IMG/VR virus record: IMGVR_UViG_3300017917_002434
Span: 186,001-250,000 of that record
Strand: one strand, 5' to 3'
Length of the DNA stretch: 64,000 bases
Shown: one piece after another, positions 18,070 through 34,115 of the stretch
Numbering within the stretch: position 1 is the stretch's first letter
Layout: the number at the start of each line of letters is the position of its first letter
Program-made: the position numbers and the translations under genes
Notes under the pieces: model-generated
Told to the model about the DNA's origin: nothing
The model's database searches: none
The model's input: the letters and a program-made list of their open reading frames with translations, nothing else

Positions 18070-18148
18070 AAACTCTTGAACCAAGACTAGGTTCTGTGTT
18101 ATTATTGTAGTGATACATAGTAAGACAGAACCTATTTTCTTGGAGTTT
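18070..18148 (+). promoter_or_regulatory. Long hairpin covering the SD of the GT9 gene, with an overlapping sigma70-like promoter (TTGAAC 18076, TGn-TATTAT 18100)
   Basis: Arms ccaaga/tcttgg, taggttctgt/acagaaccta (10 bp perfect), ttatta/tagtaa, tgta/taca closing a GTGA loop; GGAG at 18142-18145 lies in the 3' arm. Confidence 0.6.
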
Positions 18149-18150: not shown

Positions 18151-19092
18151 ATGGAACAACGCTCTAAAGCATTTTTTCTAAACGGCGGAGCAGGCCGTAT
18201 GATTTGTGCTATCCCTGCTTTTGAAAAATACGAACAAGAGTCTGGCGATAAAGACTTTATTATCATCTGCGAAGGCGGAACAGATGTATTCAAAGGACAC
18301 CCGACCCTTGATGCTAGAACCTATGATATCTGGCACAAACACCTTTTTAAAGAAAAGATCAAAGATCGAGATATCGTAAGTCCGGAACCTTATCGCATCT
18401 GGGAATACTATAACCAGAAATGTTCTATAGCACAGGCGTTCGATATCGAAATTAACAGAAAAGGTATTCGGAGCCTTCCCAAACCTACATTAATCTTAAG
18501 CAAGGATGAATTGCTTACTGGTCGCAAACTTATCAACGATGTTAAAAAACAACTAAAAAAGAATAAAATAGTTATCTTCCAACCGTTTGGTAGAGGTATT
18601 CAAGTTATCGATGATACCCCTATAGATTCAACTAGCCGTAGTATTGAATTTAAAGATGTAAAGGCTTTAATCAAAAAATTACAAGAAAAAGATTTTGGTG
18701 TAGTTTTAATGAGTGAGTTTAAGATAGATTTTACTGATGAAAAATTCAAAGATGAAATCGCTATGCCAGAAAATGTAACTATGCGTCAGTGGGCCGCAAT
18801 TATCAAATATGCTGATCATTTTTTAGGCTGCGACAGTTTAGGGCAACATCTAGCATATTGTGTAGATAAACCTGCTACAGTGTTGTTCGGATCAACATAT
18901 CCTATTAATGTGTCGTATCCAGATTGTAAATCATTTACTATCCTAGACATGGGTGAAGATTTACGTGAATATAGTCCTATCAGAATTACCATGGATGAAC
19001 GCATTGATAGAAAACACGAACCTATAATGACAATGACTCCAGAAATACAAAATTACGTTGTAGAAGCCGTACAAGGGAAACATAAAAAATGA
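18151..19092 (+). CDS. Glycosyltransferase family 9 (ADP-heptose heptosyltransferase-like)
   Basis: N-terminal 'GGAGRMICAIPA' and C-terminal GT9 signature 'WAAIIKYADHFLGCDSLGQHLAYCVDKPATVLFGST.P' (cf. DSG..HLA.A...P...LFG.T). Confidence 0.7.
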   Translation: MEQRSKAFFLNGGAGRMICAIPAFEKYEQESGDKDFIIICEGGTDVFKGHPTLDARTYDIWHKHLFKEKIKDRDIVSPEPYRIWEYYNQKCSIAQAFDIEINRKGIRSLPKPTLILSKDELLTGRKLINDVKKQLKKNKIVIFQPFGRGIQVIDDTPIDSTSRSIEFKDVKALIKKLQEKDFGVVLMSEFKIDFTDEKFKDEIAMPENVTMRQWAAIIKYADHFLGCDSLGQHLAYCVDKPATVLFGSTYPINVSYPDCKSFTILDMGEDLREYSPIRITMDERIDRKHEPIMTMTPEIQNYVVEAVQGKHKK

Positions 19093-20897
19093 CAGAACCT
19101 AAACTTAATTCTGGCTGGATAGCAGCCATAGCACGTGGGCATAATGCCGGTGTGTGTCTTTTTAAGGATGGAGAAGTAGTATTTTCTATAGAAGAAGAAA
19201 GATTAACACGACAAAAATATGACGGCGGCCCTTTAGCATCGATGGTTAAAATTTTAGAGTACACAGATAAATTAGACTATCTAGTTATCGCACATACTCA
19301 AAAACTACAAGACACTGCCGGACGCATCGATTACAGCGGTGATGATATGTACACAGGTCTAGCTAGAAAACTAGGCCTAATTAGCAGAAAAGAAAATAAT
19401 TTCAACCATCCGCAGGTAGTTGATTTAAGTTTTATGCATCATAAGCTACATGCTGCCTGTGCTTTTTATCGATCAGGGTTTGACGATGCTGTCGCACTGA
19501 TTGTAGACGGTGCTGGGACATTCATCCAATTGATGTATGGCAACGAACCGTTATGGGTTTGGGAAATTGAATCTATCATCGACTGCGATTATCCGTCGCA
19601 GTTTACGACTCTTTATAAAAATTATGGTGCTCGTGAACCAATCGCTGGCACATACATGGACAAGTGCCCGTCGGATCAGTTCGGTGAAGCTGGAAAATTC
19701 CACGAAGCATGGCTTTCGGATAGAGCAGGTATAGTTAAAACCTACGAGGCTGTCACCGAATATTGTGGGTTCTCGGCTATCGAAGCAGGGAAAACCATGG
19801 GATTATTTCCCTATGGTAAACCTAACGATAAAATTCCTAAGTTGTTCGATTTTACTTCGAAGGTTCCGTTGTCTAATAGGAATCTAATCGTGCCTGCCTA
19901 TCCATCTTCTTCTATAGTTAACAGTGCTTTGTTTGACTATCTAGATGAAGTACCTGTAGAAGGTGAAGATGTTACTAAATTACAGAGTCGTAGAGACCTA
20001 GCCTACGCTTGCCAGACTCAAACACAAGAACAGGTAGTTCGTTTAATTCGTAAAGCAGTTGAAATAAGCGGAAAGAAGAATGTAGTAATCAGCGGAGGCT
20101 ACGGATTAAATTGTGTAGCAAATTATCATTATCTAGAACAGCTAAAAGATGAAGGCATCAAGATTTATGTTGAGCCTATCAGTAATGATGCTGGTACTGC
20201 TATGGGTGCTGGAATGATGTTCTGGAGAGCTTTGTCGGATAGCAGAGAAAAACAAAAATTGGATACTCTGTATCTAGGTCCTGAGTATACATATTCTGAT
20301 AGAGAAATCCAAGAAAAAGTTAATTATGCTGGCGGAGAAGTTGTAGATGCTACTAATAAAGATGTTGTAAAACTACTCCGTGAAAAGAACATTGTGACGA
20401 TCTTTCAAGGCCGTTCAGAAAATGGTCCACGTGCTCTAGGAAACCGTTCTGTGCTGTTTGACCCAACATTCGAAGACGGTAAAGATTTTGTCAATACTGT
20501 AAAACGTAGAGAGTATTTCCGCCCATTTGCCGGTAGTATTATACACGATCACGTACATGATTGGTTCGATCTCAGAGGCATGGACGAAACCCCCCATATG
20601 ATGTACGCTGTAAATTGTAAGCCCGGGGTAGCAGAAAAAATTCCTAGTATTATACATGTCGACGGCACATGTAGAATACAGAGTGTAAAACGTGATCAAA
20701 ATCCTCACTACTACGATCTTATCAAAGAATTCTACGATCAAACAGGAATTCCTATCATTTTTAACACCAGCTTTAATCTAGGCGGCGATCCACTAGTTGA
20801 AACGCTAGACGATGCTATCGAGACATTGGTTAAGAGTGATATCGAGTATCTGTTTTTACCTGAATACGGTAAGCTGATCAAGATCGCTAATAGCTAA
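19089..20897 (+). CDS. O-carbamoyltransferase, NodU/CmcH/TobZ family
   Basis: Motifs EEERLTRQK, HH..HA..AFY, VDGAG, GKTMGL.PYG, SGG..LNCVAN, DAGTA.GA, GRSE.GPRALGNRS, KRRE.FRPFA, HVDGTCR.Q, NTSFN; ATGA overlap with the GT9 stop. Confidence 0.93.
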   Translation: MTEPKLNSGWIAAIARGHNAGVCLFKDGEVVFSIEEERLTRQKYDGGPLASMVKILEYTDKLDYLVIAHTQKLQDTAGRIDYSGDDMYTGLARKLGLISRKENNFNHPQVVDLSFMHHKLHAACAFYRSGFDDAVALIVDGAGTFIQLMYGNEPLWVWEIESIIDCDYPSQFTTLYKNYGAREPIAGTYMDKCPSDQFGEAGKFHEAWLSDRAGIVKTYEAVTEYCGFSAIEAGKTMGLFPYGKPNDKIPKLFDFTSKVPLSNRNLIVPAYPSSSIVNSALFDYLDEVPVEGEDVTKLQSRRDLAYACQTQTQEQVVRLIRKAVEISGKKNVVISGGYGLNCVANYHYLEQLKDEGIKIYVEPISNDAGTAMGAGMMFWRALSDSREKQKLDTLYLGPEYTYSDREIQEKVNYAGGEVVDATNKDVVKLLREKNIVTIFQGRSENGPRALGNRSVLFDPTFEDGKDFVNTVKRREYFRPFAGSIIHDHVHDWFDLRGMDETPHMMYAVNCKPGVAEKIPSIIHVDGTCRIQSVKRDQNPHYYDLIKEFYDQTGIPIIFNTSFNLGGDPLVETLDDAIETLVKSDIEYLFLPEYGKLIKIANS

Positions 20898-20898
20898 T

Positions 20899-20923
20899 AA
20901 AACCCCCGTTTTAGGGGGTTTTT
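20899..20923 (+). terminator. Rho-independent terminator (possibly bidirectional)
   Basis: aaaaccccc-gtttta-gggggttttt immediately after the carbamoyltransferase stop. Confidence 0.8.
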
Positions 20924-20942
20924 AGTTTCTCCAAAAATCAGT

Positions 20943-20948
20943 TAAATA
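20943..20948 (+). promoter_or_regulatory. Late promoter core (TAAATA)
   Basis: gtTAAATA directly after the terminator and before ATG 20970. Confidence 0.6.
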
Positions 20949-20969
20949 TAAGATACAACGAGCGTAACT

Positions 20970-22544
20970 ATGACTGATTTTACCAAGTACTTTGGCAGTG
21001 GTGTAAAAAATACTCTGTTTCTTAAAAACGGAGTAAACTTCTTTAATAGAGGGCCATGGCGTCAAATCTTTGCCGACACAGAAATTGATCGCTGGTATGT
21101 GGGTGATTTTGCCGCAGCACAGTATATTATTTCTGTGGAATTCGATTCACAGAAAAAAGAAACAATGTCAATACTGGTGGTTGCTAGACCTGACCAAGCC
21201 AGCTATACGATATACGGGCGTGCCTCTATAGATGATCCATTGATTACTGTTTCGGCTACAGTCAATGACAGTTATCTCAGTCTAAAATTATCTCCAATAA
21301 TCGACGATTACGAAGGCGTTCGTGCGATCTATTTTGCTCAATACTTCGCTACATTGACTGATCTAGAAAGACCCACACCTTTAACTTATCTAGTAGATGA
21401 AGGAAATATAGGTGGCGGTGGTGGTGGCGGTGGACAAATACCCGACGGCGGAGGATCTGGAGGAAGCAATGCTAATCTCTCCGCTATAGATAGAACTTTA
21501 ACTCCTACTTCAGACGGAACATTTGATGTAGGTATTGCTTTAAAAAGATTCAGAGATCTCTATCTTAAAAATACAATAAATCTAGACGGTGCTGTAATTT
21601 CTAAAAACATAGGCGGTAGCATTGAGTTACCAGAAGGAACTACTGTTGGCGGAAATGAGTTAAAATCTTTTGGCACTATTTCTGTAGCAGGCGAAAACGA
21701 CGTTGACAGTATATCGTTAAATGATAATCTAACTTTGATAGCCGGCTCTGGCATGACTATCACTACAAATTCGTCAAATAGAAGTATCACACTTTCTAGT
21801 TCAGGTGGTGGCGGTGGAGGTGGGGGCGTATCGGCTAACGCTTTCGGAGTGATAAGTGTAGCAGGTCAATCAACTATCAGAGCCGACTCCGCCTCGGATA
21901 CTCTAACTTTTGTAGCAGGTTCAGGAATATCTATAACAACCAACGCAACCAGCGATAGAATTACTATTACCAACACAGGCGGATCTAGTGGTGGCGGTGG
22001 TGGTGGCGGAACTGCTACAGATATTATAGTATCTGAAGTTCTCGATGGCGTATATCCGATGGTGATCGCCGAAGGAACAGATCCTATATCCGGACAAAGT
22101 TTATACGCTAGCTCTGGAGTGACTTTAGAAGTCACGACCAGTACATTAAATGTTACAGCAACAACAGCTAAATGGGCTGACTTAGCAGAAAAATATTTGG
22201 CTGATCGTGCCTACGAACCAGGGACTGTACTAGAGTTCGGCGGAGACAAAGAAGTCACACTAGCAGAAGATTCTACACGTAGAGTAGCAGGAGTAGTTTC
22301 GACCAATCCAGCATTCGTAATGAATGAAAACCTCCAAGGTGAAACAGTAGTAAAATTAGCATTACAGGGTCGTGTTCCTTGTAAAGTCAGAGGAAAAATA
22401 CGCAAGGGAGACATGTTAGTAAGTGGAGGGGGTGGTTATGCCAGACCATGTAATGACCCAATGCTAGGTACGGTAATAGGAAAAGCTCTAGAAGATTTTG
22501 ACGAAGTGTCGGGAATCATAGAGGTTGTAGTTGGCAGATTATAA
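20970..22544 (+). CDS. Fibre/spike protein with poly-Gly linkers and C-terminal intramolecular-chaperone (peptidase G2-like) domain
   Basis: Three poly-Gly tracts; C-terminal 'ADLAEKY..D..YEPGTVL.FGG.KEVT...VAGVVSTNPA.VMN...LALQGRVPCKV.G.I.KGD.LV'. Confidence 0.65.
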   Translation: MTDFTKYFGSGVKNTLFLKNGVNFFNRGPWRQIFADTEIDRWYVGDFAAAQYIISVEFDSQKKETMSILVVARPDQASYTIYGRASIDDPLITVSATVNDSYLSLKLSPIIDDYEGVRAIYFAQYFATLTDLERPTPLTYLVDEGNIGGGGGGGGQIPDGGGSGGSNANLSAIDRTLTPTSDGTFDVGIALKRFRDLYLKNTINLDGAVISKNIGGSIELPEGTTVGGNELKSFGTISVAGENDVDSISLNDNLTLIAGSGMTITTNSSNRSITLSSSGGGGGGGGVSANAFGVISVAGQSTIRADSASDTLTFVAGSGISITTNATSDRITITNTGGSSGGGGGGGTATDIIVSEVLDGVYPMVIAEGTDPISGQSLYASSGVTLEVTTSTLNVTATTAKWADLAEKYLADRAYEPGTVLEFGGDKEVTLAEDSTRRVAGVVSTNPAFVMNENLQGETVVKLALQGRVPCKVRGKIRKGDMLVSGGGGYARPCNDPMLGTVIGKALEDFDEVSGIIEVVVGRL

Positions 22545-22550
22545 CACCAA

Positions 22551-22556
22551 TAAATA
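22551..22556 (+). promoter_or_regulatory. Late promoter core (TAAATA)
   Basis: aaTAAATA 9 nt before ATG 22566. Confidence 0.6.
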
Positions 22557-22565
22557 CTAGGTAAA

Positions 22566-23141
22566 ATGACAGTACAGACAAAACAATTTAGAACTGAATT
22601 TGGTTACAGAAGTCCGGGATTCCTCGTAGATCAGGAAGGCGATCTAACGGCATTATCTATAACTACCTCAAATGTCAATGCTACTACGATAAGCATAAGT
22701 GGTTCGGCAGTGATCGATACTAATCGATTAACAGAAACTATAAGAAATAGTAGTTTAGAAACACTAGGAACATTACAAAATTTAACAGTAAACGGTGACG
22801 TATTACTGAAAAAGAATAATATAAATCGGCTGACCCTGATAAATGGCAGATTAGTAATTAACAGTCTAGCCACAGGAGCAATAGATAATGTTGATATAGG
22901 TCAAACTACACCTGGTAAAGTAGATACCTATCAATTAAATGTGGTAGAAAATAACGGCGTAAATGGTGAATTAGTTGCCGATGGTGCTAACATATCGTTT
23001 GATGCTGCTACTATAACCGGTACTGTTACTTATATAGAAAATATTTCTATCAATGCGGTTCCTACATCAGGTCAACATGCCGCTCGTAAAGATTATGTAG
23101 ATAATTCAGTCATCGCTTTCGCGGTGGCATTTGGAGCCTAA
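22566..23141 (+). CDS. Short fibre-like structural protein (191 aa)
   Basis: 'SSLETLGTLQNLTVNG', 'G.IDNV.IG.TTP', 'PT..QHAARKDYVD' fibre motifs and hydrophobic C-terminal 'IAFAVAFGA'. Confidence 0.6.
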   Translation: MTVQTKQFRTEFGYRSPGFLVDQEGDLTALSITTSNVNATTISISGSAVIDTNRLTETIRNSSLETLGTLQNLTVNGDVLLKKNNINRLTLINGRLVINSLATGAIDNVDIGQTTPGKVDTYQLNVVENNGVNGELVADGANISFDAATITGTVTYIENISINAVPTSGQHAARKDYVDNSVIAFAVAFGA

Positions 23142-23150
23142 GGATAAAAG

Positions 23151-26100
23151 ATGGCAAAGAGAAAAATAGACAATTATACATTTAGACCGGGTATCAGTTA
23201 CCTGGGAAATCTGTATCCAGATGAATGGCAGAGCTTTTCTGATAACGTGCCGTTTATCAAAGCAGAACTAACAGCCTATTTAAACTATAGGATAGACATC
23301 GACACTGAGGTAAATCTGTATCCAAATGCTGTCCGTATTTTAGAAAACAATATTAATTTTATCAAAGAAGAAGCGACTGCTTGGATAGCTACACAGGTAG
23401 CAGGTAACTTTCCTGGATTTGTAGGTTATACTTACGATTCAGCCAAATGTAAAAGAGACATTGGATTTGTTTTAACCGCTTATATCCATGATGTTAGATA
23501 CGGAGGTAATGAAGACACTAGAACCATAGTCGGAAAATACTGGATCAACAATGAGCCACAGGTCGATGGGGATCGTCAGGCTGAGGTTAAAACTCACGAG
23601 TTTATCAGAGATCTTATAACAGATTACATTTTGCCTCTAGCTTCGTACACACCATTACAGCTTATCGCAACTAGATACACAACAGGACCAGCAGCCGAGG
23701 CCAACGCAGCAGCCCGTATAGATACCCTTTCAGCAATCACGACCACAGTAATCGCTAATGGCTTATCGTCGATGCCAGCGATATCTTATAAATCTGCTCC
23801 ATACGAAAATTATACATTTAATTCTGAAAAATGTCAGAGAGATCTTGGCTACGTACTAGATGCTTACTTACATGACTTGCGTTATGGCGGAAACGAACAG
23901 ACTCGACTCACGATACAAAAATACTACGACAACGGAGTACTACAAGTCGACGGCAGCGGCCAAGCTGAAGTTGAAGGTCATGAATTTGTAAGAGATCTTA
24001 TTATTAATAATATCATGCAGAATGAAGCCGGTACGATATTGTATCCTGAAGCTGTGAGATTATTAACGCTGAACAAGGCCTATTTACAAAATGAAATCTT
24101 AGGATGGATCGCTAATGAAGTCACTGAAGCTACTAAATGCGAAAGAGATATTGGATATCTTATCGATGGAGCACAATATGACATAGTACTAGGCACAAAT
24201 TACAATGCTTTATTTTTAGGCTTAGCAGAATTCAACTCTTTAGATAATGATTTTTTCGTTATCGACACTATACAAAGAACTAAAACAGCCATAGCAGCTC
24301 TACCTAATGTTGCTGCGAGTACCGCAGCAGTGGCTAGAAATAATGCTTTCTTCAATGAAGTAGTTGACATAATCCAGAATGGTAGAGGAAGTGCTAATGA
24401 ATTAGTGTTAGCCGAACCAAGTAATGCTACAGTCAGTAGGATCGCAGCTAAAAATCAACTTGTAGCCAATAAAAATTTCTTAGCCGCAGAAGTTAATGCG
24501 TGGGTAGCAGAGCAATATCCTACAGCTGATCATGATCCTGTAAAATGTTCTAGAGACGTTAAGTATGCTATCGATGCCTTATGCTACGATATCTTATATG
24601 GCGGAAACTCGGCTACTTACGATCAGGCTAGATTTTTCTTTTACGGTTTCTCTAGCGGAGCTCCAGGCATTGATCCTACTCATAGATTACAAACTGTAGC
24701 TGCCTATGTACATCTAAAACAAGTTATCGGTCAAGTGGTACAGAATCAAACGGTTACTAAGACCACAGGCAATACCTTAACACAGAATCAAACATTTCCA
24801 GCAGCCAGTTCGTCGGATGCTATTATCTGTCAAAATCTAGTACAGATCACAGCAGATGTTGTAGCAGCGACAACACAAACACAGGCAAATACGATTTTAT
24901 CCGGTATTGTAAGATCAGTTCCTAGCATCACATTCGCGACTTCTGCTTTACAGACAGCTTTTAATGCGATAACAACAGCTAAAACATCTGTGATAAATTC
25001 TGTTGTTGTTTTCAAAGGATATACCTATGATTCTGCCAAGTGTATCAGAGATTCTGGCTTTGTCATAGATGCCCTAATCTATGACTTAGAAAATAACGGT
25101 AACGAAGAATCAAGACGAATAGCCCAGAAATACTATATAGATGGAGTTTTTCAAGTTGACGGATCCCGTATTCCTGAAATAGCCAGCTATAGATTTTTAC
25201 AAGAAACGATCAAGAATTATATTTTTCCAAGAGTAAATGCTCCTGATTATCAGATTGTATATCCTCAGATATTAACAGCACCATCTGCTGAAGTAGGTGC
25301 CTACGCAAGAATTACTGAACTAACAGATGTGTTTATTAATTTTCTAAAAGATGGTCCTAGTAGTTTACCAGCACTGTCTCAGAGAACTGTTCCTTATCAA
25401 ACAGTAGAACAGCAGGTAGTTGACACTACCAAAGCCTACGATCCTGATGCTGGCACAGCTATTTTAGCACTTTCAAATGCTCTAGTTAACATCATAGAAC
25501 AAGGTCTCGGAGCATTGCCTGTTAAAGAAAGTGCTGGATATGGTTTGATCAAATTTCAGGGTGTTGTAAGATTAGAAGACCTTTTACTAATCACAAATAC
25601 TACAAAAAATGTAGTTATCTATAATTTCTCTAGCAATACTGCTGGCGGCGAAATTGTGCCAGAGTTTGACGGCGATGACGATTTCATAGCGTTCAAACAG
25701 GTTACAGATCGAGTTATTCATCTACGATTAAATGTTGATACATCGACTATGGATGAAACTGACGAGCTACAGATATTTGCTGAAGCCCCGGAAATGAAAG
25801 TTCGTCCGTACGATTTTGGTACAGATGCTATCGAACGTCATAGAGTTGCTTCGCCTCAGTCAATGCTTGACGCTGACTTCGAATATGGTCTACAACCAAC
25901 TAAGTGGCAGGCTATTGGTATCGCCAGAGGTTATCCATCAGTGTATGAAGTACCAGGATCAGATTTTGAAGTTGTGTCTATAACAACCGATGCGTCATTT
26001 CCTAACAACGGTGTAGGTGCTTCGACTATAACTGTAACCACAGCAGCACCGCACGGATTATCAGCTGGTACACCGGTTACAGTGGCTGGTCTTGACACAG

Positions 26101-29100: not shown

Positions 29101-31232
29101 CTCTCGAAAGCATAGCAGGATTCCCTACTACGGGAATCGTTTATATCGATAACGAAATGATTTCGTACACTGGAGTTAATACCAGCCAGAACAAACTCAC
29201 AGGGTGTACTAGATCAGCACAGTTAGATCTATTCATTGCTGGTGCTAATAGAAATTTTACCGCAGGGGTAGCTGCTAATCACAGCAACGGTACAGGTGTA
29301 ATTTTAATGAATAACACTACAACACCTTTGATTAGCCACTGGGGTAGTGCGTTCTTGACCGACGGATTGTTTGATTTTGACCGTGGATACATTTTCAACT
29401 ATGCTTCTACCGGTCTAAGTGTAAGCACTGTTAAATCAACGGCTTTCCTAATTCGTCTAGCACCTAGTGTGTCAAACGCAGTTGTTGGAGATCTAGGCGA
29501 TAGAGAGCTCCTAAATAGAGCACAATTACTATTGAAAGAAATCGCAGTAACGTCAGACACAGGCTCGGGCGGTATTATTGTTGAGGGAGTATTAAATCCT
29601 CAGAATTATCCTTCTAATCCTAGCGACATTGTTTGGTCAGGTTTGTCCGGTGTTGCGGCCGGTGGTCAGCCTAGCTTCGCTCAGATAGCACCAGGAGGAT
29701 CTGTAAACTGGTCAGGCGGCGTAGCCCAACCAACAGCTACAGCCACAGCATTAAACACAGTTACCGCCAATATCACTGTACCAAATAAAACAGCATTCAA
29801 TAGACCTGCTGGTACATCATTCGTCTATGTTACACAGACTAGCTGGAATACATCAGGATCCCAGAGTGGTTTCGCTATAGCAGCTTCAGATACTAAATTC
29901 CAGTCTGGTACAACAATTTCATCCGTAGCTTCGAGTCCTAGTCCAGTAGCCACGACATTAGGAATATTAACTTCTAGTATGTCTACATTCTTTAGAAGTA
30001 TATCGGGTAATAGTATCAGCGGTAACGGTATTACTGCCACATTGAACTTTAACAACCAAGGATACGTACCGTTTCCAGTAAATTCGAGAATAACTGTTAG
30101 TGGTTTCAGTGCTTATAATGGAACTTATATCGTAACTGGAGCAGGAAATAACTTTGTACAGTTTGCCTCTACGTCGACTAACTTCCAAACAAACGGAACA
30201 GTCCAGACTGCTTACGTCGCTGGGCAGACAACATTGAACATAACAGAAGCTAGTTGGAATAACATGACTAGCCCTGTAACACAGACAGGATTTGGCGTAA
30301 CATCTTCATTTCCGGCAGGAACAACTGTCACTGGAGTTACATCGATACAAGGAACATCGCCGAACAGATACTATACCGTGACATTCAGTCAGGGTCTTAC
30401 TTCTGATTTACCGTTATCATCTACGACTATCAATACCAGTTTTGGTGGAGCAAGAACAAGCACAAATAACCTATTCTTTACCGCAGCTAGTTGGACAGCA
30501 TTACCAGTAGATGTTCCGGTTAACGGCACACTGACTAATGATCCTACCAAATTTACTGGCGGAACTATTATCAACTCTATCAGCGGCCTACAGACATTTG
30601 GCGGTACTGGATACTATTCTGTATCATTTAGTAACAACTGTATAGGAACATTAGCAGGCGGAACAACTGTCACATTTGATACTATACCTTATTTTACTCT
30701 GTTCTTGAGTAGAACTTCGGCACAGGCTGTTAATGCTAATGCCACTATAACTATGTCATTGGCACAAAACTCTGCTGTCACCAACTTTGTGTATTTTACA
30801 CAGGCCAGTTGGGAAACTCTAGTTTCGACCTATTCAGCAGGTGCCGGTACAGAAGTAGCAGATACAAAATTTGCTGCGGGTACTCGTGTTGCTACTGTGA
30901 GTACTCTAAGAACGTTTGGTGGTTCTGGATATTATGTAGTAACATTTACCCAGACGTCTAATGCTGTTGTGGCTGGCGGAAACACTATTACATTTAGATT
31001 TGGACAACCTCCATATGCGTTACCGGGCGAACAGGTATTCTCATTCATCAGTTTACCAGGAAGTTCGGACAGTCTTAACCTAGAGGACCTCAAAGAATTA
31101 ACCAATACTACCTTGGGTGGTAGAGGTACATTCCCTAACGGTCCTGACGTTTTGGCTATCAACATCTTCAAAGTATCTGGAGCAGCAGTTAACGCTAACG
31201 TAATTCTACGTTGGTCCGAAGCACAAGCCTAA
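23151..31232 (+). CDS. Giant virion structural protein (2693 aa) with five N-terminal CxRD helical repeats and Thr/Gly/Ser-rich beta repeats
   Basis: AAGGA SD; 'LLLITNTTKN..IYNF', 'DADFEYGLQPTKW', 'RYQSGKG', 'IQYSWYGAGFIDF' blocks typical of large T4-like virion proteins; repeated 'GG..Y..G..(I/L).I.G..LGG....ND'. Confidence 0.7.
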   Translation: MAKRKIDNYTFRPGISYLGNLYPDEWQSFSDNVPFIKAELTAYLNYRIDIDTEVNLYPNAVRILENNINFIKEEATAWIATQVAGNFPGFVGYTYDSAKCKRDIGFVLTAYIHDVRYGGNEDTRTIVGKYWINNEPQVDGDRQAEVKTHEFIRDLITDYILPLASYTPLQLIATRYTTGPAAEANAAARIDTLSAITTTVIANGLSSMPAISYKSAPYENYTFNSEKCQRDLGYVLDAYLHDLRYGGNEQTRLTIQKYYDNGVLQVDGSGQAEVEGHEFVRDLIINNIMQNEAGTILYPEAVRLLTLNKAYLQNEILGWIANEVTEATKCERDIGYLIDGAQYDIVLGTNYNALFLGLAEFNSLDNDFFVIDTIQRTKTAIAALPNVAASTAAVARNNAFFNEVVDIIQNGRGSANELVLAEPSNATVSRIAAKNQLVANKNFLAAEVNAWVAEQYPTADHDPVKCSRDVKYAIDALCYDILYGGNSATYDQARFFFYGFSSGAPGIDPTHRLQTVAAYVHLKQVIGQVVQNQTVTKTTGNTLTQNQTFPAASSSDAIICQNLVQITADVVAATTQTQANTILSGIVRSVPSITFATSALQTAFNAITTAKTSVINSVVVFKGYTYDSAKCIRDSGFVIDALIYDLENNGNEESRRIAQKYYIDGVFQVDGSRIPEIASYRFLQETIKNYIFPRVNAPDYQIVYPQILTAPSAEVGAYARITELTDVFINFLKDGPSSLPALSQRTVPYQTVEQQVVDTTKAYDPDAGTAILALSNALVNIIEQGLGALPVKESAGYGLIKFQGVVRLEDLLLITNTTKNVVIYNFSSNTAGGEIVPEFDGDDDFIAFKQVTDRVIHLRLNVDTSTMDETDELQIFAEAPEMKVRPYDFGTDAIERHRVASPQSMLDADFEYGLQPTKWQAIGIARGYPSVYEVPGSDFEVVSITTDASFPNNGVGASTITVTTAAPHGLSAGTPVTVAGLDTAISGISRAEGAFVLVTIPTPTTFTYFAKSRVGTTSGTSLKTTYTQIRKGGFYTGASIGLPTINLLSNGTSGTFVTQFDTPAATSRIAIASGNIPSVGSPMNAAVGIGFGSQVTAVVGAGGVVVTPTVLGDYAPTLLGLTTLTVASTSGIVIGLGANDQTGSSTFVESIVGTNVTFTRPFSGAVIGNTTTYTELTGTNEISIGSAATFNVVGSSAGYISVAVNSGGSDYQVGDVLRIVGTDLTGTTPANDLLIKVATVSGGAILTADVISGTSVMSSPNETISGINNSSYTATSPDSTIGSGATFDVTRNGTAFTSVINAGGTGYVKGTEFLILGTVFTNNTTPANDVEITVTQTTATFTGLLQDATTLSGSSAQFSITRIGATYTSLVVSFAGSGYALGEIVTIYGTQLGGNNPSNDLQIQVDNVGGGGEIIAASLVSGLVANEDAPGVISQISTAGTGDNRTTINNVPVLIVPGSGINCEFSITRTASGYTNVVVTDGGTAYLPGNRIRILGSDLGGANTTNDAIVSVTSVDSITGAITAATVTGTGVAGINLQLYSSVTLSEFTTATIASSTSLGFGTLATLQIIFQEPHGIPPGGSFIVTVSSDNGSNNHALANGSFSATQIPTRNTITFQARSPGVITGAPITGVVYPRPDSFFTHRPFDGGVQLGTGGPQHGVQAIRQSKKYIRYQSGKGVMYTTGALFAPSYDVLSILATDVEVGATIEITLGDNDHGLQRGAVIRLSGVLTGGYDGDYEVDEIVSERTFRIIATKRVGSRKPSLSFSCQISTLRWKGAVVRAGVFDDQNGIFWEYDGQTLWAVQRTSTKQLAGTISVNAGSNRITGLNSRFRDQLKAGDAVTIRGMTHIVTHVDSQTSMTVNPDYRGVSNVSNAKMSLISEVRVQQRDFNKDRLDGTGPSGYDLDITKMQMIGIQYSWYGAGFIDFMLRGSDGNYVFAHRMRNSNINTEAYMRTGNLPVRYEVSNYGATSRLVGDIGNTSTELTLESIAGFPTTGIVYIDNEMISYTGVNTSQNKLTGCTRSAQLDLFIAGANRNFTAGVAANHSNGTGVILMNNTTTPLISHWGSAFLTDGLFDFDRGYIFNYASTGLSVSTVKSTAFLIRLAPSVSNAVVGDLGDRELLNRAQLLLKEIAVTSDTGSGGIIVEGVLNPQNYPSNPSDIVWSGLSGVAAGGQPSFAQIAPGGSVNWSGGVAQPTATATALNTVTANITVPNKTAFNRPAGTSFVYVTQTSWNTSGSQSGFAIAASDTKFQSGTTISSVASSPSPVATTLGILTSSMSTFFRSISGNSISGNGITATLNFNNQGYVPFPVNSRITVSGFSAYNGTYIVTGAGNNFVQFASTSTNFQTNGTVQTAYVAGQTTLNITEASWNNMTSPVTQTGFGVTSSFPAGTTVTGVTSIQGTSPNRYYTVTFSQGLTSDLPLSSTTINTSFGGARTSTNNLFFTAASWTALPVDVPVNGTLTNDPTKFTGGTIINSISGLQTFGGTGYYSVSFSNNCIGTLAGGTTVTFDTIPYFTLFLSRTSAQAVNANATITMSLAQNSAVTNFVYFTQASWETLVSTYSAGAGTEVADTKFAAGTRVATVSTLRTFGGSGYYVVTFTQTSNAVVAGGNTITFRFGQPPYALPGEQVFSFISLPGSSDSLNLEDLKELTNTTLGGRGTFPNGPDVLAINIFKVSGAAVNANVILRWSEAQA

Positions 31233-31236
31233 AAGG

Positions 31237-31264
31237 TTGACAATCAGACTTTTTGCTGTATAAT
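31237..31264 (+). promoter_or_regulatory. sigma70 consensus (early) promoter of the heptose operon
   Basis: TTGACA (31237-31242), 16 nt, TATAAT (31259-31264); predicted +1 at about 31271, the ATG. Confidence 0.8.
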
Positions 31265-31270
31265 TACAGC

Positions 31271-31666
31271 ATGAGTCTGATTTTTGTTAACGGTTCTTTT
31301 GATATACTTCATCCAGGACACATCGAACTGCTAAACTATGCCAAAAGTTTAGGATCTCATCTCATGGTTGCCATAGATTCGGACGCTAGAATTACTAGTT
31401 TAAAAGGACCGACTCGGCCTATTAACAATCAACGTTATAGAGCGTTCATGTTAAAAAATCTTAGAGCAGTGGACGAAGTAGTAATTTTTGATTCTGACCA
31501 AGAATTAATAAACTTGATCGCTGCCTGTGATATAATGGTAAAAGGCAGCGACTATATGGGTAAACCTATCGTAGGCGAAGAAGTCTGCGATGAAATTATA
31601 TTTTTTGATAGATTATATGACTATTCAACAACAAAAATCATTCAAGATATTGTTAATCGGAGATGA
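31271..31666 (+). CDS. hldC: D-glycero-beta-D-manno-heptose 1-phosphate adenylyltransferase (RfaE domain II)
   Basis: 'NGSFDILHPGH' (HxGH), 'DSD..I..LKG..RPIN', 'VKGSDY', 'YSTT.II'; start moved to ATG 31271. Confidence 0.85.
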   Translation: MSLIFVNGSFDILHPGHIELLNYAKSLGSHLMVAIDSDARITSLKGPTRPINNQRYRAFMLKNLRAVDEVVIFDSDQELINLIAACDIMVKGSDYMGKPIVGEEVCDEIIFFDRLYDYSTTKIIQDIVNRR

Positions 31667-32366
31667 TTGTTCTGATGTGTATCAATATGGCACAGTTGAA
31701 AGGTTAAGTCCCGAAGCACCCGTGCCGGTATTTGTTCCTACCCACAAAGAAACACGGCCTGGAATGGCCGGTAATGTATCTAAGAATCTCGAAGCACTAG
31801 GGTGTGAAGTAAATTATATTCATGCTAAAACATCCACTAAAACGAGACTGATAGATAAACGCAGTAATCAACATATTGCTAGGATAGATAATGACGAAAT
31901 GTCTGAACCTATATCGTTCGAAACTGAAATACCTAAAATTTACGATGCTATTGTCGTCAGCGACTACAACAAAGGCACAGTCACATATGAACTCATCGAA
32001 GAGTTAATTGATACTAAAATTCCTGTGTTTATCGACACTAAAAAAATTGATCTAGAAAGATTCCAGGGCAGCTGGGTGAAAATTAACGCTGCTGAGTATA
32101 GACTAATTAAAAGTGAATGTACAGGATTGATCGTAACACTAGGTGAGGACGGTGCTCGAGTTATTCATCATGATATTCACTACCCAGCACCTAAAGTAGA
32201 AATCAGCGATGTCTGTGGTGCCGGAGATACATTTTTGGCTGCTCTAGCTTATAGATATTGCGAAACAAAAGACATCGACGAAGCTGTTAAGTTTGCTATC
32301 AAAGCAGCCAGTATCACAGTCCAGCATCTAGGTAATTACGCACCAACATTAGAGGAAATAAAATGA
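31617..32366 (+). CDS. hldA: D-glycero-D-manno-heptose 7-phosphate kinase (RfaE domain I, PfkB family)
   Basis: 'IGD...D.Y.YG.V.RLSPEAPVPV', 'G.AGNV..NL.ALG', 'VSDYNKG', 'DVCGAGDTF'. Confidence 0.85.
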   Translation: MTIQQQKSFKILLIGDDCSDVYQYGTVERLSPEAPVPVFVPTHKETRPGMAGNVSKNLEALGCEVNYIHAKTSTKTRLIDKRSNQHIARIDNDEMSEPISFETEIPKIYDAIVVSDYNKGTVTYELIEELIDTKIPVFIDTKKIDLERFQGSWVKINAAEYRLIKSECTGLIVTLGEDGARVIHHDIHYPAPKVEISDVCGAGDTFLAALAYRYCETKDIDEAVKFAIKAASITVQHLGNYAPTLEEIK

Positions 32367-32743
32367 CAGAAAGACTTACAGGAAAAGTAGATAAAGGATG
32401 GGGCTTTGAAATTATATGGGCTACCAACGATCACTATTGCGGAAAAATTTTAGTATTCGAAAAGGCAGGAAATAAGTTTTCTATGCACTTCCATAAAACC
32501 AAAGATGAAACTTGGTTTGTTAATTCTGGCAAATTTAAATTACGTTGGATAGATACTAAAGATGCTAAAATCTATGAACAAGAATTAAATGAAGGCGATA
32601 CTTGGCATAATCCTCCTTTACAACCTCATCAATTAGAAGCCATGACAGATGGTGCTATGGTGTTTGAAGTCAGCACAGCAGATTCTATAGAGGATAATTA
32701 TCGATTAGTACCCGGAGACAGTCAAAAGAAAGCAGAACAATGA
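32363..32743 (+). CDS. Cupin-fold sugar isomerase-like protein
   Basis: 'KGWG.E', 'SMHFH..KDETW.V..G', 'P..PH.L.A', 'EVST.D...DNYR' cupin metal motifs; translationally coupled on both sides. Confidence 0.75.
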   Translation: MTERLTGKVDKGWGFEIIWATNDHYCGKILVFEKAGNKFSMHFHKTKDETWFVNSGKFKLRWIDTKDAKIYEQELNEGDTWHNPPLQPHQLEAMTDGAMVFEVSTADSIEDNYRLVPGDSQKKAEQ

Positions 32744-33228
32744 ACATATATCTAGACATGGACGATGTTGTAGCTGATTGGTTTGGCTACGCTAGAGAGT
32801 ATCTCAATGAGCCACTGTTCAAAGATGGTGACATATTGCCCGAAGCTACTTGGCAAAAATTAAAAAATGATCAGCGTATGTATAGTAAACTTCCTGTTAA
32901 AAAGGGAGCATATGATTTAGTCAACTGGTGTAGAAATTATAGAGATACAAAAAACGCAGGACTTTATTTTCTCAGTGCTATCCCCAAAGGCAATGATATG
33001 CCCTGGGCACCTCAAGATAAAGTTTTTTGGGCACATGAATATTTTCCTGACATCCCTGTATTTTTAGGTCCATATAGTTTTGATAAGTGGGTTAGATGTT
33101 CTCCTGGAGATATCCTAATAGATGATCGTAGATCAAATTGTGAAGATTGGGAACGTGCCGGGGGCCTATCACACATATACCGCTCTTGGCCGGAATGTAA
33201 ACTTTGGTTAGAGGACATTCTAAAATGA
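32740..33228 (+). CDS. HAD-superfamily phosphatase, 5'(3')-deoxyribonucleotidase-like
   Basis: 'IYLDMDDVVADW' (DxD motif I), 'FLSA', 'K..W', 'ILIDDR..N...W..AGG'. Confidence 0.75.
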   Translation: MNIYLDMDDVVADWFGYAREYLNEPLFKDGDILPEATWQKLKNDQRMYSKLPVKKGAYDLVNWCRNYRDTKNAGLYFLSAIPKGNDMPWAPQDKVFWAHEYFPDIPVFLGPYSFDKWVRCSPGDILIDDRRSNCEDWERAGGLSHIYRSWPECKLWLEDILK

Positions 33229-34115
33229 TCATAGTAACTGGTGGTGCCGGCTTCATTGGTTCTAATATTATAAAAGGTCTAAATGATAGATCTATTTCAA
33301 ATATTATTGTTGTTGATGATATTAATCCCGATAAAGAAAAAAATCTAGAAGATTTAAAATTTTCAGATATACTTTCCCCTCAAGATTTCTACGGCATCTG
33401 GAATCACTGGCACATCGTTGATGCGGTATTTCACGAAGGTGCTATATCATCTACCACAGAAAAAGATCAAAATAAGATAGATCAGTATAATCTTCAACCC
33501 GGTTATTGGCTAGTAGAGCAGGCTGCTAGAAACAATTTTTTATTATCTTATGCTAGCTCTGCTTCAGTCTACGGTGACAGCAATACCTTTAAAGAAAAAC
33601 AGCCACTAAATCCTCAATCGCTTTATGCTACTAGTAAAATGCTGTTAGATCAATATGTCTATAGCACATTATTAGATTATCCTGATACTAGAATACAGGG
33701 TTGGAGATATTTCAACGTCTATGGAAAAAATGAAATTCACAAAAAAGATCAAGCGAGCCCGATAACGAAATTTAGTCAGCAGGCCAAAAATACAGGAAAA
33801 ATAAAAGTTTTTAAAGGCAGCGAAAATTTTCAGCGAGATTTTATCTGTGTCAGCGACATAGCCGATATTAAAATAAAATCATTAGACAAGAACTTTAATG
33901 GAATTTTTAATCTCGGTACAGGAAAAGCAATATCGTTTTTAGAAGTGGCTGAACTGATCAAAGAAAGATATTCGGCGACTATTGAAGAAGTAGAGTTTCC
34001 TCAAGAGCTTATCAATCAATACCAAAAATATACCTGTTCGGATAATACAGAATTATTGAAGGTGATAGGAAATTATGATTTTACGTCTATTAGATCTTTT
34101 CTTTCAACGACATAA
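33225..34115 (+). CDS. hldD: ADP-L-glycero-D-manno-heptose 6-epimerase
   Basis: 'MIIVTGGAGFIGSNI', 'FHEGAISSTTE', 'YASSASVYG', YxxxK (YATSK), 'RYFNVYG..E.HK', 'RDFI.V.D', 'YQKYT'; GAGGA SD before ATG 33225. Confidence 0.85.
   Translation: MIIVTGGAGFIGSNIIKGLNDRSISNIIVVDDINPDKEKNLEDLKFSDILSPQDFYGIWNHWHIVDAVFHEGAISSTTEKDQNKIDQYNLQPGYWLVEQAARNNFLLSYASSASVYGDSNTFKEKQPLNPQSLYATSKMLLDQYVYSTLLDYPDTRIQGWRYFNVYGKNEIHKKDQASPITKFSQQAKNTGKIKVFKGSENFQRDFICVSDIADIKIKSLDKNFNGIFNLGTGKAISFLEVAELIKERYSATIEEVEFPQELINQYQKYTCSDNTELLKVIGNYDFTSIRSFLSTT

What the first reader, a model, noticed from the sequence alone, without database searches (positions are those of the whole stretch)
18151..34115. Phage-encoded heptose synthesis, transfer and carbamoylation system spread around the tail-fibre genes
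Seen: a GT9 gene translationally coupled to a NodU/CmcH carbamoyltransferase (18151-20897) inside the fibre region, and an HldC-HldA-cupin-HAD-HldD operon (31271-34115) right after the largest fibre gene; both units have sigma70-type promoters, unlike their TAAATA-driven neighbours. Known: GT9 enzymes use ADP-L-glycero-D-manno-heptose on LPS (WaaC/WaaF); the related TibC/AAH enzymes heptosylate Ser residues of proteins; Pseudomonas LPS core heptose carries a 7-O-carbamoyl group attributed to a carbamoyltransferase in the core locus. Inference: the phage makes its own ADP-heptose and installs (carbamoyl-)heptose either on its Ser/Thr-rich fibres (virion glyco-armour or LPS mimicry) or on host LPS core (receptor masking, superinfection exclusion).
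Basis: partly seen in the sequence, partly recalled or inferred. Interest (0 to 1): 0.88.

Follow-up and report, generated by a model that had tools for sequence, protein, structure and literature searches.

The report
Phage heptose-making and heptose-transfer genes
A large uncultured aquatic phage carries genes to make activated heptose sugar, a phage-only enzyme to transfer it and an enzyme to carbamoylate it, set among its tail-fibre genes; the gene set has been known in marine cyanophages since 2005, but what it decorates has never been tested.

Summary
The genes are real and lie at the stated coordinates. A GT9-fold glycosyltransferase (18151-19092) overlaps a TobZ/NodU-type O-carbamoyltransferase (19089-20897) by 4 nt. 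Behind the giant fibre gene sits an operon of HldC, HldA, a metal cupin, a HAD phosphatase and HldD (31271-34115), driven by a perfect TTGACA-16-TATAAT promoter.

The same genes form one contiguous block in the cyanophages P-SSM2, S-CAM1 and S-SSM7. There they have been called "LPS genes" since 2005 and never tested.

New here:
- The backbone resembles Pseudomonas PA5oct jumbo phages, not cyanomyoviruses.
- The transferase family is confined to phages.
- The transferase-carbamoyltransferase pair is almost always adjacent, and is tied in both directions to cysteine/glycine-rich proteins of the fibre module.
- The cupin is a core pathway gene resembling mannose-6-phosphate isomerases, so it may replace GmhA.
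- The cyanophage "phosphoheptose isomerase" is really a HAD phosphatase.
- A covarying hairpin precedes the transferase gene.
- A second glycan cluster (GT8 x2, GT25 x2, methyltransferases) lies at 54-63 kb.

Homology supports the chemistry: ADP-heptose synthesis, transfer, then carbamoylation. The acceptor is unresolved. Synteny favours virion proteins over host envelope or DNA. This is a new member of a known but unexplained kind of cluster.

The parts
13758..14434 (+). Two small fibre-like proteins (106 and 110 aa) that open the conserved accessory module
   Evidence: PHROG tail-fibre families. Homologues in the same position in P-SSM2 and S-CAM1. Among cyanophage isolates, p106 occurs only in GT-bearing ones.
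14456..17401 (+). Three paralogous cysteine/glycine-rich proteins of about 322-331 aa with about 30 Cys each (14456-15424, 15426-16421, 16433-17401). They are candidate structural proteins and candidate acceptors.
   Evidence: Sequences and alignment. phrog_4205, function unknown. No Pfam, NCBIfam or PDB match. Present upstream of the GT in 73/82 GT-anchored loci. 61/64 loci anchored on these proteins carry the GT downstream.
17421..18068 (+). 215-aa acidic protein of unknown function, always directly upstream of the GT. A late-type ATAAATA motif lies 23 nt before its start.
   Evidence: Present in 76/82 loci. Weak homologues are PSSM2_305 and S-CAM1_108. Motif.
18081..18143 (+). Conserved hairpin in the p215-GT spacer. 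The outer helix is CCAAGA/TCTTGG and touches the Shine-Dalgarno GGAG (18142-18145). The inner stem is 18088-18097 paired with 18125-18134. A T-rich run follows.
   Evidence: RNAalifold on 17 divergent loci gives a 9-bp stem in which all 9 pairs show compensatory double changes, and the loop motif ATATATA-T is conserved. No Rfam family matches.
18151..19092 (+). Phage-specific GT9-fold glycosyltransferase, the putative heptosyltransferase
   Evidence: Pfam GT9 22.4 bits. phrog_8954 2e-136. AF2 pLDDT 96; Foldseek top hits are 3tov, TibC, WaaF and WaaC. The donor motif G-C-D228-S-x-G-Q-H233 aligns to WaaF/WaaC.
19089..20897 (+). O-carbamoyltransferase of the NodU/CmcH/TobZ family, overlapping the GT by 4 nt
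   Evidence: Carbam_trans_C 191 bits and Carbam_trans_N 97 bits. PDB matches: 7xb6 7e-59, GdmN, NovN, TobZ. Adjacent to the GT in 79/82 viral loci and 15/15 MAG loci.
20899..20922 (+). Intrinsic terminator closing the GT-carbamoyltransferase unit
   Evidence: 9-bp stem with 5 GC pairs plus a T-run; sequence.
20970..31232 (+). Three fibre genes (524, 191 and 2693 aa) inserted between the GT-carbamoyltransferase pair and the hld operon
   Evidence: PHROG tail-fibre hits for the 524-aa protein. Late TAAATA motifs precede 20970 and 22566. In P-SSM2, S-CAM1 and L022 the two sugar units are contiguous.
31237..31264 (+). Consensus sigma70-type promoter TTGACA-16-TATAAT. The ATG at 31271 lies where transcription should start, giving a leaderless-type start.
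   Evidence: 12/12 match, unique in 17-35 kb. The -35 is kept in L137, L130 and L095; the -10 is identical in L137 and L130 but shifted in L095.
31271..31666 (+). HldC-like heptose-1-phosphate adenylyltransferase
   Evidence: TIGR02199 is the best family at 120 bits, below its 181 cutoff. phrog_7878.
31590..32366 (+). HldA-like heptose-7-phosphate kinase (PfkB family). The true start is probably the ATG at 31617.
   Evidence: TIGR02198 is the best family at 157 bits, below its 345 cutoff. The GAGDTF catalytic motif is invariant.
32363..32743 (+). Metal-binding cupin, a core gene of the module and a candidate sedoheptulose-7-phosphate isomerase (GmhA analogue)
   Evidence: Present in 75/83 HldA-anchored loci. 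H42, H44, E49 and H89 are invariant. hhalign E=6.8e-5 to the PMI-type cupin of 57637-58404. Sugar-isomerase cupins are among its PDB matches.
32740..33228 (+). HAD phosphatase of the NT5C type, a candidate GmhB analogue
   Evidence: DxD motif. The PDB profile matches 5'(3')-deoxyribonucleotidases at 3.5e-8. Never co-occurs with the mini-HAD of T4-GC306 (15 against 11 loci, none with both); where the comparison is clear it fills the same slot between cupin and HldD.
33204..34115 (+). HldD, ADP-glycero-manno-heptose 6-epimerase. The likely start is the ATG at 33225.
   Evidence: TIGR02197 268.9 bits against a 274.6 cutoff. 42% identity to E. coli RfaD, E=1e-65.
53999..63342 (.). Second glycan-gene cluster: GT8 x2, GT25 x2, three to four methyltransferases, an SDR epimerase/dehydratase, a UDP-glucose dehydrogenase fragment and an HldC-like + PMI-cupin fusion
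   Evidence: Pfam, NCBIfam, called genes.

Best explanation
The phage encodes a self-contained pathway for a nucleotide-activated heptose. The proposed steps are: the cupin isomerises sedoheptulose-7-phosphate, HldA phosphorylates C1, the HAD removes the 7-phosphate, HldC adenylylates, and HldD epimerises C6. The operon is switched on from an early, host-type promoter. A phage-specific GT9-fold transferase then moves the heptose onto an acceptor, and the translationally coupled O-carbamoyltransferase carbamoylates a hydroxyl of the product, using carbamoyl phosphate and ATP as TobZ does. The most likely acceptor is a virion protein of the same accessory module: one of the cysteine/glycine-rich paralogues or a tail fibre. 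On that reading the system makes a carbamoyl-heptose coat on the host-recognition apparatus. Shown here: gene identities by homology, the fold of the GT, and the synteny and co-occurrence statistics. Inferred: the roles of the cupin and the HAD, the donor sugar of the GT, the substrate of the carbamoyltransferase, and above all the acceptor.
For: Pathway. HldC, HldA and HldD each have the heptose family as best match, and HldD is 42% identical to E. coli RfaD. HldC, HldA, cupin and HldD travel together in 81, 83, 75 and 67 of 83 loci. The cupin keeps its metal ligands and aligns to a PMI-type cupin that is fused to an HldC-like domain elsewhere in the window. Two unrelated HADs never co-occur, and in close relatives of the window they swap in the same slot.
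Transferase. The model has pLDDT 96 and its 22 best PDB matches are all GT9 (29 of the top 31). It has the GT9 donor motif. GT9 is the only Pfam sugar-transferase family hit, in 25/60 family members. All 7 cyanophage isolate species with the GT also have HldA.
Carbamoyltransferase. Both domains score well above cutoff and TobZ, GdmN and NovN are homologues. It is adjacent to the GT in 79/82 and 15/15 loci.
Acceptor. The GT-carbamoyltransferase pair is locked to p215 and the Cys/Gly-rich paralogues in both directions (76/82 and 73/82; 61/64). The same order is found in P-SSM2, S-CAM1 and S-SSM7. Distant GT homologues in 78-kb Vibrio phages sit between a 1952-aa hypothetical protein and a 1643-aa tail protein, with no carbamoyltransferase or hld genes. 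The family is phage-restricted. Marine Synechococcus LPS has neither heptose nor Kdo (PMC4515613). TibC shows that GT9-fold enzymes can heptosylate proteins (established knowledge).
Against: No direct evidence of any glycan on any virion exists. Virion proteomes are available only for cyanophages that lack the module (PMC3037559). Synteny inside a hypervariable 'host recognition cluster' may reflect an insertion hotspot rather than function (PMC7029224). GT9, GT8 and GT25 are classical LPS/LOS-core families. The hld operon has an early-type promoter, and the second glycan cluster lies among replication genes, which suits host remodelling just as well. The heptose-family HMM scores for HldC and HldA are below the curated cutoffs. 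The window's HAD resembles deoxyribonucleotidases, and 57/83 loci show no HAD. The catalytic base of the GT could not be aligned. The host of this phage is unknown and may itself have heptose in its LPS.
Confidence: 0.4

Rival explanations
1. Host envelope remodelling. The phage-made heptose, together with the GT8/GT25 products, is added to host LPS/LOS or another envelope glycan during infection. This would mask receptors and block superinfection or grazer recognition. It is the reading given in the literature.
For: GT9, GT8 and GT25 are LPS/LOS-core families. The hld operon has an early sigma70-type promoter. Pseudomonas LPS core carries 7-O-carbamoyl-heptose (established knowledge). This interpretation is published for cyanophages and pelagimyophages (PMC1079782, PMC3037559, PMC7029224, PMC12801897).
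Against: The GT family is absent from bacterial isolate genomes. Only 15 loci were found in 185,579 species, all on phage-like MAG contigs. It is therefore not a captured host LPS gene. Marine Synechococcus, the host genus of several carriers, has no heptose or Kdo in its LPS (PMC4515613), so the canonical acceptor is missing. The GT-carbamoyltransferase pair is embedded on the same strand in a late structural block and tied to structural-looking genes. No flippase, ligase or polymerase was seen in the window or 10 kb beyond it.
Confidence: 0.3
2. DNA hypermodification. Heptose, possibly carbamoylated, is attached to hydroxymethylated bases of the phage genome to evade restriction.
For: A phage gene cluster with a HAD-kinase, a cytidylyltransferase-like enzyme and a GT-B enzyme puts one or two heptoses on 5hmC, and such clusters can neighbour structural genes (bioRxiv 10.1101/2023.12.21.572611). 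2OG-Fe(II) oxygenases sit beside the cluster in P-SSM2 and S-SSM7.
Against: The DNA glycosyltransferases in that study resemble T4 beta-GT, and no beta-GT structure is among the top 50 matches of this GT. No hydroxymethylase, C5-methyltransferase or TET-type enzyme was seen in the ORFs scanned in the window. A T4 gp42 query hit 1504 phage records, yet cyanophages are not among the ten commonest organisms (fewer than 31 records each), although the terminase search found 378 'Synechococcus' and 61 'Cyanophage' records.
Confidence: 0.07
3. The heptose is built into a soluble or secreted small glycoside (natural-product-like), or the genes are drifting cargo without function ('stuffer DNA').
For: NodU/TobZ-type carbamoyltransferases are typical tailoring enzymes of natural products. 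S-SSM7 has a tryptophan halogenase, extra oxygenases and a methyltransferase in the cluster. The 'stuffer' idea was raised in PMC3037559.
Against: The reading frames are intact. Catalytic motifs are invariant across hundreds of divergent copies. Gene order is tightly conserved and a covarying regulatory hairpin is present. All this argues for selection on a defined function. No scaffold-forming enzyme for an aglycone was found.
Confidence: 0.1

Closest known systems
'LPS gene' clusters of large cyanomyoviruses: P-SSM2 genes 302-313, S-SSM7 114-133, S-CAM1 103-115 (T4-GC 302-308)
   Same: The genes and most of their order are the same: small fibre-like proteins, Cys-rich paralogues, a p215-like protein, GT, carbamoyltransferase, HldC, HldA, a HAD, the cupin and the epimerase, all inside the tail-fibre region. 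Protein identity is 37-54%.
   Different: Here the cluster is split by three fibre genes, and the hld part has its own consensus promoter. An NT5C-type HAD replaces the mini-HAD. HldD is on the same strand. The backbone is PA5oct-like, not Kyanoviridae.
LPS inner-core heptosyltransferases WaaC/WaaF (CAZy GT9), with the core-locus carbamoyltransferase of Pseudomonas
   Same: GT-B fold, the donor-binding D-S/T-G-x-x-H motif, dependence on an ADP-heptose pathway, and the pairing of heptose with O-carbamoylation.
   Different: Sequence identity is only about 10-12%, and sequence similarity is confined to about 50 residues. The family is phage-only. There is no evidence for a Kdo-lipid A acceptor. 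The catalytic Asp could not be aligned.
Autotransporter heptosyltransferases TibC/AAH
   Same: A GT9-type fold with TM-scores equal to those for WaaF (0.62-0.65). They use ADP-heptose to O-glycosylate a large repetitive surface adhesin encoded next door. This is the best functional analogy for fibre glycosylation.
   Different: No conserved cysteine cluster for an iron site (no Cys among conserved columns). The phage protein is about 90 residues shorter. No autotransporter is present. TibC has no carbamoyltransferase partner.
Phage DNA sugar-hypermodification clusters (Pyle et al.) and mycobacteriophage virion glycosylation (Freeman et al. 2023)
   Same: Phage-encoded sugar activation plus a transferase acting on a phage component. 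Heptose on DNA has been shown, and glycans on capsid and tail-tube proteins have been shown.
   Different: The DNA systems use beta-GT-like enzymes and need a 5hmC source. The mycobacteriophage systems use other GT families and other sugars. Neither has a carbamoyltransferase.

Membership tests
CAZy GT9 / Pfam PF01075 heptosyltransferases | GT-B two-Rossmann fold closest to solved GT9 structures | tested here: met
   AF2 model pLDDT 96, pTM 0.93. The 22 best Foldseek PDB matches are all GT9 (29 of the top 31): 3tov TM 0.66, TibC 0.62-0.65, WaaF 0.61, WaaC about 0.5.
CAZy GT9 / Pfam PF01075 heptosyltransferases | Score at or above the Pfam gathering threshold | tested here: inconclusive
   22.4 bits against a cutoff of 22, covering the C-terminal domain only. 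25 of 60 diverse family members match GT9, and no other glycosyltransferase family matches.
CAZy GT9 / Pfam PF01075 heptosyltransferases | Donor-site motif (G-x-D-S/T-G-x-x-H-L/I-A) that binds ADP-heptose | tested here: met
   G226-C-D228-S-L-G-Q-H233 is invariant or nearly so and aligns to the WaaF and WaaC motif.
CAZy GT9 / Pfam PF01075 heptosyltransferases | N-terminal catalytic aspartate (WaaC Asp13) | tested here: inconclusive
   An insignificant HMMER alignment puts the near-invariant R16 at that position. hhalign does not align the N-terminal domain at all.
CAZy GT9 / Pfam PF01075 heptosyltransferases | [quoted passage not shown] | not testable with these tools
   Only indirect evidence: every GT-bearing isolate also encodes HldA.
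Autotransporter heptosyltransferases (TibC/AAH) | Conserved cysteine cluster binding iron, with dodecameric assembly | tested here: not met
   No cysteine is among the invariant or near-invariant columns of the 60-member family alignment. Oligomeric state was not tested.
Autotransporter heptosyltransferases (TibC/AAH) | Encoded next to its autotransporter substrate | tested here: not met
   The neighbours are fibre and Cys/Gly-rich phage proteins, and no autotransporter domain is present. The analogy of a large adhesin next door does hold.
[quoted passage not shown] | HldD epimerase | tested here: met
   42% identity to E. coli RfaD over 284 aa, E=1e-65. TIGR02197 268.9 bits against a 274.6 cutoff.
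[quoted passage not shown] | HldA kinase and HldC adenylyltransferase | tested here: inconclusive
   The heptose-specific models are the best matches by a wide margin, but both score below the equivalog cutoffs (157 of 345 and 120 of 181). The kinase active-site motif is intact.
[quoted passage not shown] | GmhA (SIS-domain sedoheptulose-7-P isomerase) | tested here: not met
   No SIS domain is found in the operon or the window. A PMI-like metal cupin is the candidate replacement.
[quoted passage not shown] | GmhB (HAD heptose-1,7-bisphosphate phosphatase) | tested here: inconclusive
   A HAD with the DxD motif is present, but it is closest to 5'(3')-deoxyribonucleotidases. Never found together with an EcbF/BcbF-type capsule phosphatase, which takes its slot in close relatives.
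NodU/CmcH/TobZ O-carbamoyltransferases | Kae1-like N-terminal domain plus YrdC-like C-terminal domain, both above Pfam cutoffs | tested here: met
   PF02543 97.5 bits (cutoff 24) and PF16861 191.3 bits (cutoff 27). Homology to 7xb6, GdmN, NovN and TobZ.
Phage DNA sugar-hypermodification clusters | A 5hmC/5hmU source (ThyA-like hydroxymethylase, or C5-methyltransferase plus TET-like oxygenase) and a beta-GT-like DNA glycosyltransferase | tested here: inconclusive
   None was seen among the scanned ORFs of the 64-kb window or in 10 kb beyond it. No beta-GT is in the top 50 fold matches. The other roughly 195 kb of the genome could not be read.

The most novel reading that the evidence does not exclude
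A phage-only branch of the GT9 fold, always paired with an O-carbamoyltransferase, decorates cysteine/glycine-rich virion proteins or tail fibres with carbamoyl-heptose. This would be the first heptose-based virion glycosylation system in phages. It would be fed by a pathway in which a PMI-like cupin replaces GmhA non-orthologously and either of two unrelated HADs replaces GmhB.
Probability: 0.3. Interest if true: 0.75.

Novelty: new member of a known kind. Interest (0 to 1): 0.55.

Why it matters
"LPS" or "cell-wall modification" genes have been a recognised but untested feature of large marine phage genomes for twenty years. They account for much of the extra genome size of the larger cyanophages P-SSM2 and S-SSM7. 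They are usually explained, without data, as changing the host surface.

Three findings turn that vague annotation into a concrete question that cultured phages (P-SSM2, S-CAM1, S-SSM7) and E. coli heptose mutants can answer. The transferase is a phage-restricted family. It is tied to structural genes. The pathway may contain non-orthologous replacements for GmhA and GmhB.

If the target is the virion, it would add a new sugar chemistry to phage host recognition in the ocean. If the target is the host or the DNA, the same experiments would show that instead.

Tried and rejected
- Near-identical DNA in isolated phages: none.
- I first took the window for a cyanomyovirus. The tail-sheath stabiliser and terminase are closest to Pseudomonas PA5oct-like jumbo phages, so I dropped that.
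- Sequence profiles of the GT against PDB gave nothing with the shallow alignment and only weak WaaF/WaaC matches with the deep one. The first AF2 model, from 26 close sequences, was poor (pLDDT 66) and was replaced.
- tblastn of the Cys-rich protein and p215 against isolates found nothing, probably because of low-complexity filtering and divergence. Local BLAST recovered the homologues.
- The P-SSM2 expression paper has no data for these genes. Virion proteomes exist only for phages without the module.
- Collagen-like repeats as targets for GT25-type enzymes: none in the fibres.
- Searches of Pfam, NCBIfam and PDB for the Cys-rich proteins gave nothing.
- I tried to place a dCMP hydroxymethylase on the window's contig through a collection scan. 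This was uninformative because only the 80 best T4-like hits are returned. Walking the 270-kb contig was not affordable at 10 kb per look-up.
- Rfam has no family for the hairpin.
- The genome-contig scan with the widest alignment failed for lack of conserved stretches and was repeated with a narrower one.

Full report
**What is there.**
- ORF 18151-19092 (313 aa) reaches the Pfam GT9 model only at threshold (22.4 bits against 22). It belongs to phrog_8954, "unknown function".
- It overlaps by 4 nt ORF 19089-20897 (602 aa). This protein has both carbamoyltransferase domains far above cutoff. Its homologues with solved structures are the O-carbamoyltransferases 7xb6, GdmN, NovN and TobZ.
- A clean terminator follows (20899-20922). 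Then come late-type TAAATA motifs and three fibre genes, the last of 2693 aa.
- Twenty-one bases after that gene's stop codon the second unit begins: HldC-like, HldA-like, a 126-aa cupin, a 162-aa HAD and HldD.
- In NCBIfam the heptose-specific models are the best hits for HldC, HldA and HldD. HldD comes within 6 bits of the equivalog cutoff and is 42% identical to E. coli RfaD.

**Promoters.**
The hld unit is preceded by TTGACA-16-TATAAT (31237-31264). This is the only 12/12 match in the 18 kb scanned, and its -35 hexamer is kept in relatives. The -10 is identical in the two closest relatives and shifted in the third. The ATG at 31271 sits where transcription should start, so a leaderless-type message is likely; this is an inference.

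What is conserved across distant relatives is a hairpin in the p215-GT spacer. RNAalifold on 17 loci gives a 9-bp stem in which every pair shows compensatory double changes. The loop keeps the motif ATATATA-T. A T-run and the ribosome-binding site follow. No Rfam family matches. The hairpin could be a terminator that separates the GT from the upstream late gene, a processing site, or a promoter-bearing element. I did not resolve which.

**Which phage.**
There is no near-identical isolate. The window comes from a 269,730-bp IMG/VR contig. The sugar genes are most similar to those of cyanomyoviruses, at 37-54% identity. The backbone is different: the tail-sheath stabiliser and the large terminase are closest to Pseudomonas PA5oct-like jumbo phages, with the terminase at 53%. 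The host is therefore unknown.

**It is a known cluster.**
In P-SSM2, S-CAM1 and S-SSM7 the same genes lie together in the tail-fibre region, in this order:
- small fibre-like proteins
- two to five cysteine-rich proteins
- a p215-like protein
- the GT, annotated "hypothetical"
- the carbamoyltransferase
- HldC and HldA
- a "phosphoheptose isomerase"
- the cupin and the epimerase

Sullivan et al. called these "LPS genes" in 2005. In 2010 they noted that four of them co-occur in three phages and asked whether they work or are "stuffer DNA" (PMC1079782, PMC3037559). Later papers list heptose genes, or "cell wall synthesis and modification" genes, in cyanophages and pelagimyophages. All read them, without experiments, as altering the host surface (PMC7378029, PMC7029224, PMC12801897). 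I found no paper proposing or testing heptosylation of phage particles.

**The transferase.**
A model built from 26 close sequences was poor. With 60 diverse family members the model reached pLDDT 96.
- Its 22 best PDB matches are all GT9 structures, as are 29 of the top 31; the other two are plant NDH-PSI chains. TM-scores are 0.66 for Veillonella 3tov, 0.62-0.65 for TibC, 0.61 for WaaF and about 0.5 for WaaC. The next fold class lies two to three orders of magnitude lower in E-value.
- At sequence level only the donor-site motif aligns: G-C-D228-S-x-G-Q-H233 against the WaaF/WaaC motif.
- The N-terminal acceptor domain does not align, so the catalytic base is unassigned.
- No cysteine is conserved in the family, so a TibC-type iron site is not present.
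- The family is small, with 477 clusters at 50% identity among 1.8 billion representatives.
- It is confined to phages. A scan of one genome for each of 185,579 species found 15 loci. All are on MAG contigs assigned to mutually incongruent taxa, from archaea to Bacteroidota. All 15 have the carbamoyltransferase next door, and some have the Cys-rich or hld genes.

**Synteny.**
Among 82 loci anchored on the GT:
- the carbamoyltransferase is adjacent in 79
- p215 is upstream in 76
- the Cys/Gly-rich paralogues are upstream in 73

In the reverse test, 61 of 64 loci anchored on the Cys-rich protein, with room downstream, carry the GT. Among cyanophage isolates the small protein p106 occurs only in GT-bearing ones.

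A distant GT homologue (26% identity) in 78-kb Vibrio phages lies between a 1952-aa hypothetical protein and a 1643-aa tail protein. Those phages have no carbamoyltransferase and no phage-encoded hld genes.

All seven cyanophage isolate species with the GT also have HldA. Five species have HldA without this GT.

**The pathway.**
Among 83 loci anchored on HldA, HldC is present in 81, the cupin in 75 and HldD in 67. A HAD is present in only 26.
- The cupin keeps the classical metal ligands H42, H44, E49 and H89.
- It aligns (hhalign E=6.8e-5) to the PMI-type cupin of a fusion protein at 57637-58404. The N-terminal half of that fusion is HldC-like.
- Converting sedoheptulose-7-phosphate to D-glycero-D-manno-heptose-7-phosphate is the seven-carbon analogue of the PMI reaction.
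- No SIS-domain GmhA is present.

From these points I infer that the cupin is the pathway's isomerase. Dioxygenase-type cupins match it equally well, so this is a hypothesis.

The window's HAD is closest to 5'(3')-deoxyribonucleotidases. In the close relative L130 the slot between cupin and HldD is filled instead by a roughly 100-aa protein, the one annotated "phosphoheptose isomerase" in cyanophages. That protein has the DxDxT, T, K and DD motifs of HAD phosphatases. It matches the EcbF/BcbF capsule phosphatase family and PDB entry 9iqw. The two HADs never co-occur: 15 loci have one, 11 have the other and none has both. Both are therefore plausible GmhB analogues, and the "isomerase" annotation is wrong.

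**A wider sugar toolkit.**
At 53999-63342 the window has two GT8 genes, two GT25 genes, three or four methyltransferases, an SDR epimerase/dehydratase, a UDP-glucose dehydrogenase fragment and the HldC-PMI fusion. Beyond the window lie a helicase, a second carbamoyltransferase N-domain gene and a radical-SAM gene. No flippase, ligase or polymerase appears there. The phage could thus build an oligosaccharide, not just add one heptose.

**What it most likely does.**
The chemistry is well supported by homology and co-occurrence: nucleotide-heptose synthesis, transfer by a GT9-fold enzyme, then O-carbamoylation.

The acceptor is the open point. I favour a virion protein of the same module, at about 0.4, for these reasons:
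- the two-way synteny
- the phage-only distribution of the GT
- the independent placement of distant homologues between giant virion-type genes
- the lack of heptose and Kdo in the LPS of marine Synechococcus, the host genus of several carriers (PMC4515613)
- the TibC precedent for protein heptosylation

Host envelope remodelling remains a strong rival, at about 0.3. Its support is the LPS-type GT families, the early-type hld promoter, and the second cluster's position among replication genes.

DNA heptosylation has a real precedent (bioRxiv 10.1101/2023.12.21.572611). That system uses beta-GT-like enzymes and needs a 5hmC source. Neither is seen here, though most of the genome could not be read.

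**Verdict.**
This is a new member, in a new phage lineage and with a rearranged layout, of a gene cluster that has long been known and remains functionally unexplained. Its value lies in making that old question testable.

Noticed in passing
window 53999-63342: A second glycan-gene cluster: GT8 x2, GT25 x2, three to four methyltransferases, an SDR epimerase/dehydratase and a truncated UDP-glucose dehydrogenase. It lies next to UvsX and helicase genes, and GC content is lower there (0.35-0.38).
   Followed up: partly
window 57637-58404: A fusion protein with an HldC-like nucleotidyltransferase at the N-terminus and a PMI-type cupin at the C-terminus. This 'Rosetta-stone' fusion links the two kinds of protein that are separate genes in the hld operon.
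   Followed up: partly
window 18081-18143 and the same spacer in L007-L062: A covarying hairpin with a conserved ATATATA-T loop and a T-run lies directly upstream of the GT ribosome-binding site. It has no Rfam family. It could be a terminator, a processing site or a promoter-bearing element.
   Followed up: partly
window 14456-17401: Three tandem paralogues of about 322-331 aa with about 30 cysteines and 13-18% glycine, carrying the motif WGAGGSG-x-MCCCGGG-x-PGN. They match nothing in Pfam, NCBIfam or PDB. The third ORF probably starts at 16433, not 16265.
   Followed up: partly
L001 13027-13371 (P-SSM2 gene 311) and L130 5067-5366: The cyanophage gene annotated 'phosphoheptose isomerase' (T4-GC 306) is a minimal HAD phosphatase of the EcbF/BcbF type. 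In related phages it replaces the window's NT5C-like HAD in the same slot.
   Followed up: yes
window 34742-36172 and 47386-48972: The tail-sheath stabiliser and large terminase are closest to Pseudomonas PA5oct-like jumbo phages (34% and 53%), although the sugar genes are closest to cyanomyoviruses. This suggests module exchange between phage families.
   Followed up: partly
window 45282-45722: A TnsA-like endonuclease domain gene sits between the tail-tube and terminase genes, possibly a homing-type mobile element.
   Followed up: no
L267 1-1558 (contig about 257.8-259.3 kb, beyond the window): A second, short carbamoyltransferase N-domain gene (308 aa) lies next to a radical-SAM gene.
   Followed up: no
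L252-L266: GT-carbamoyltransferase loci occur in MAGs labelled Methanobacteriota, Woesearchaeota, Actinomycetota, Chitinophagales and others. These are most likely phage contigs binned into cellular genomes.
   Followed up: partly
window 31259-31273: The ATG of HldC lies 6 nt after the -10 hexamer and has no Shine-Dalgarno sequence, which implies a leaderless message. The short gap between the -10 region and the ATG is kept in L095.
   Followed up: partly
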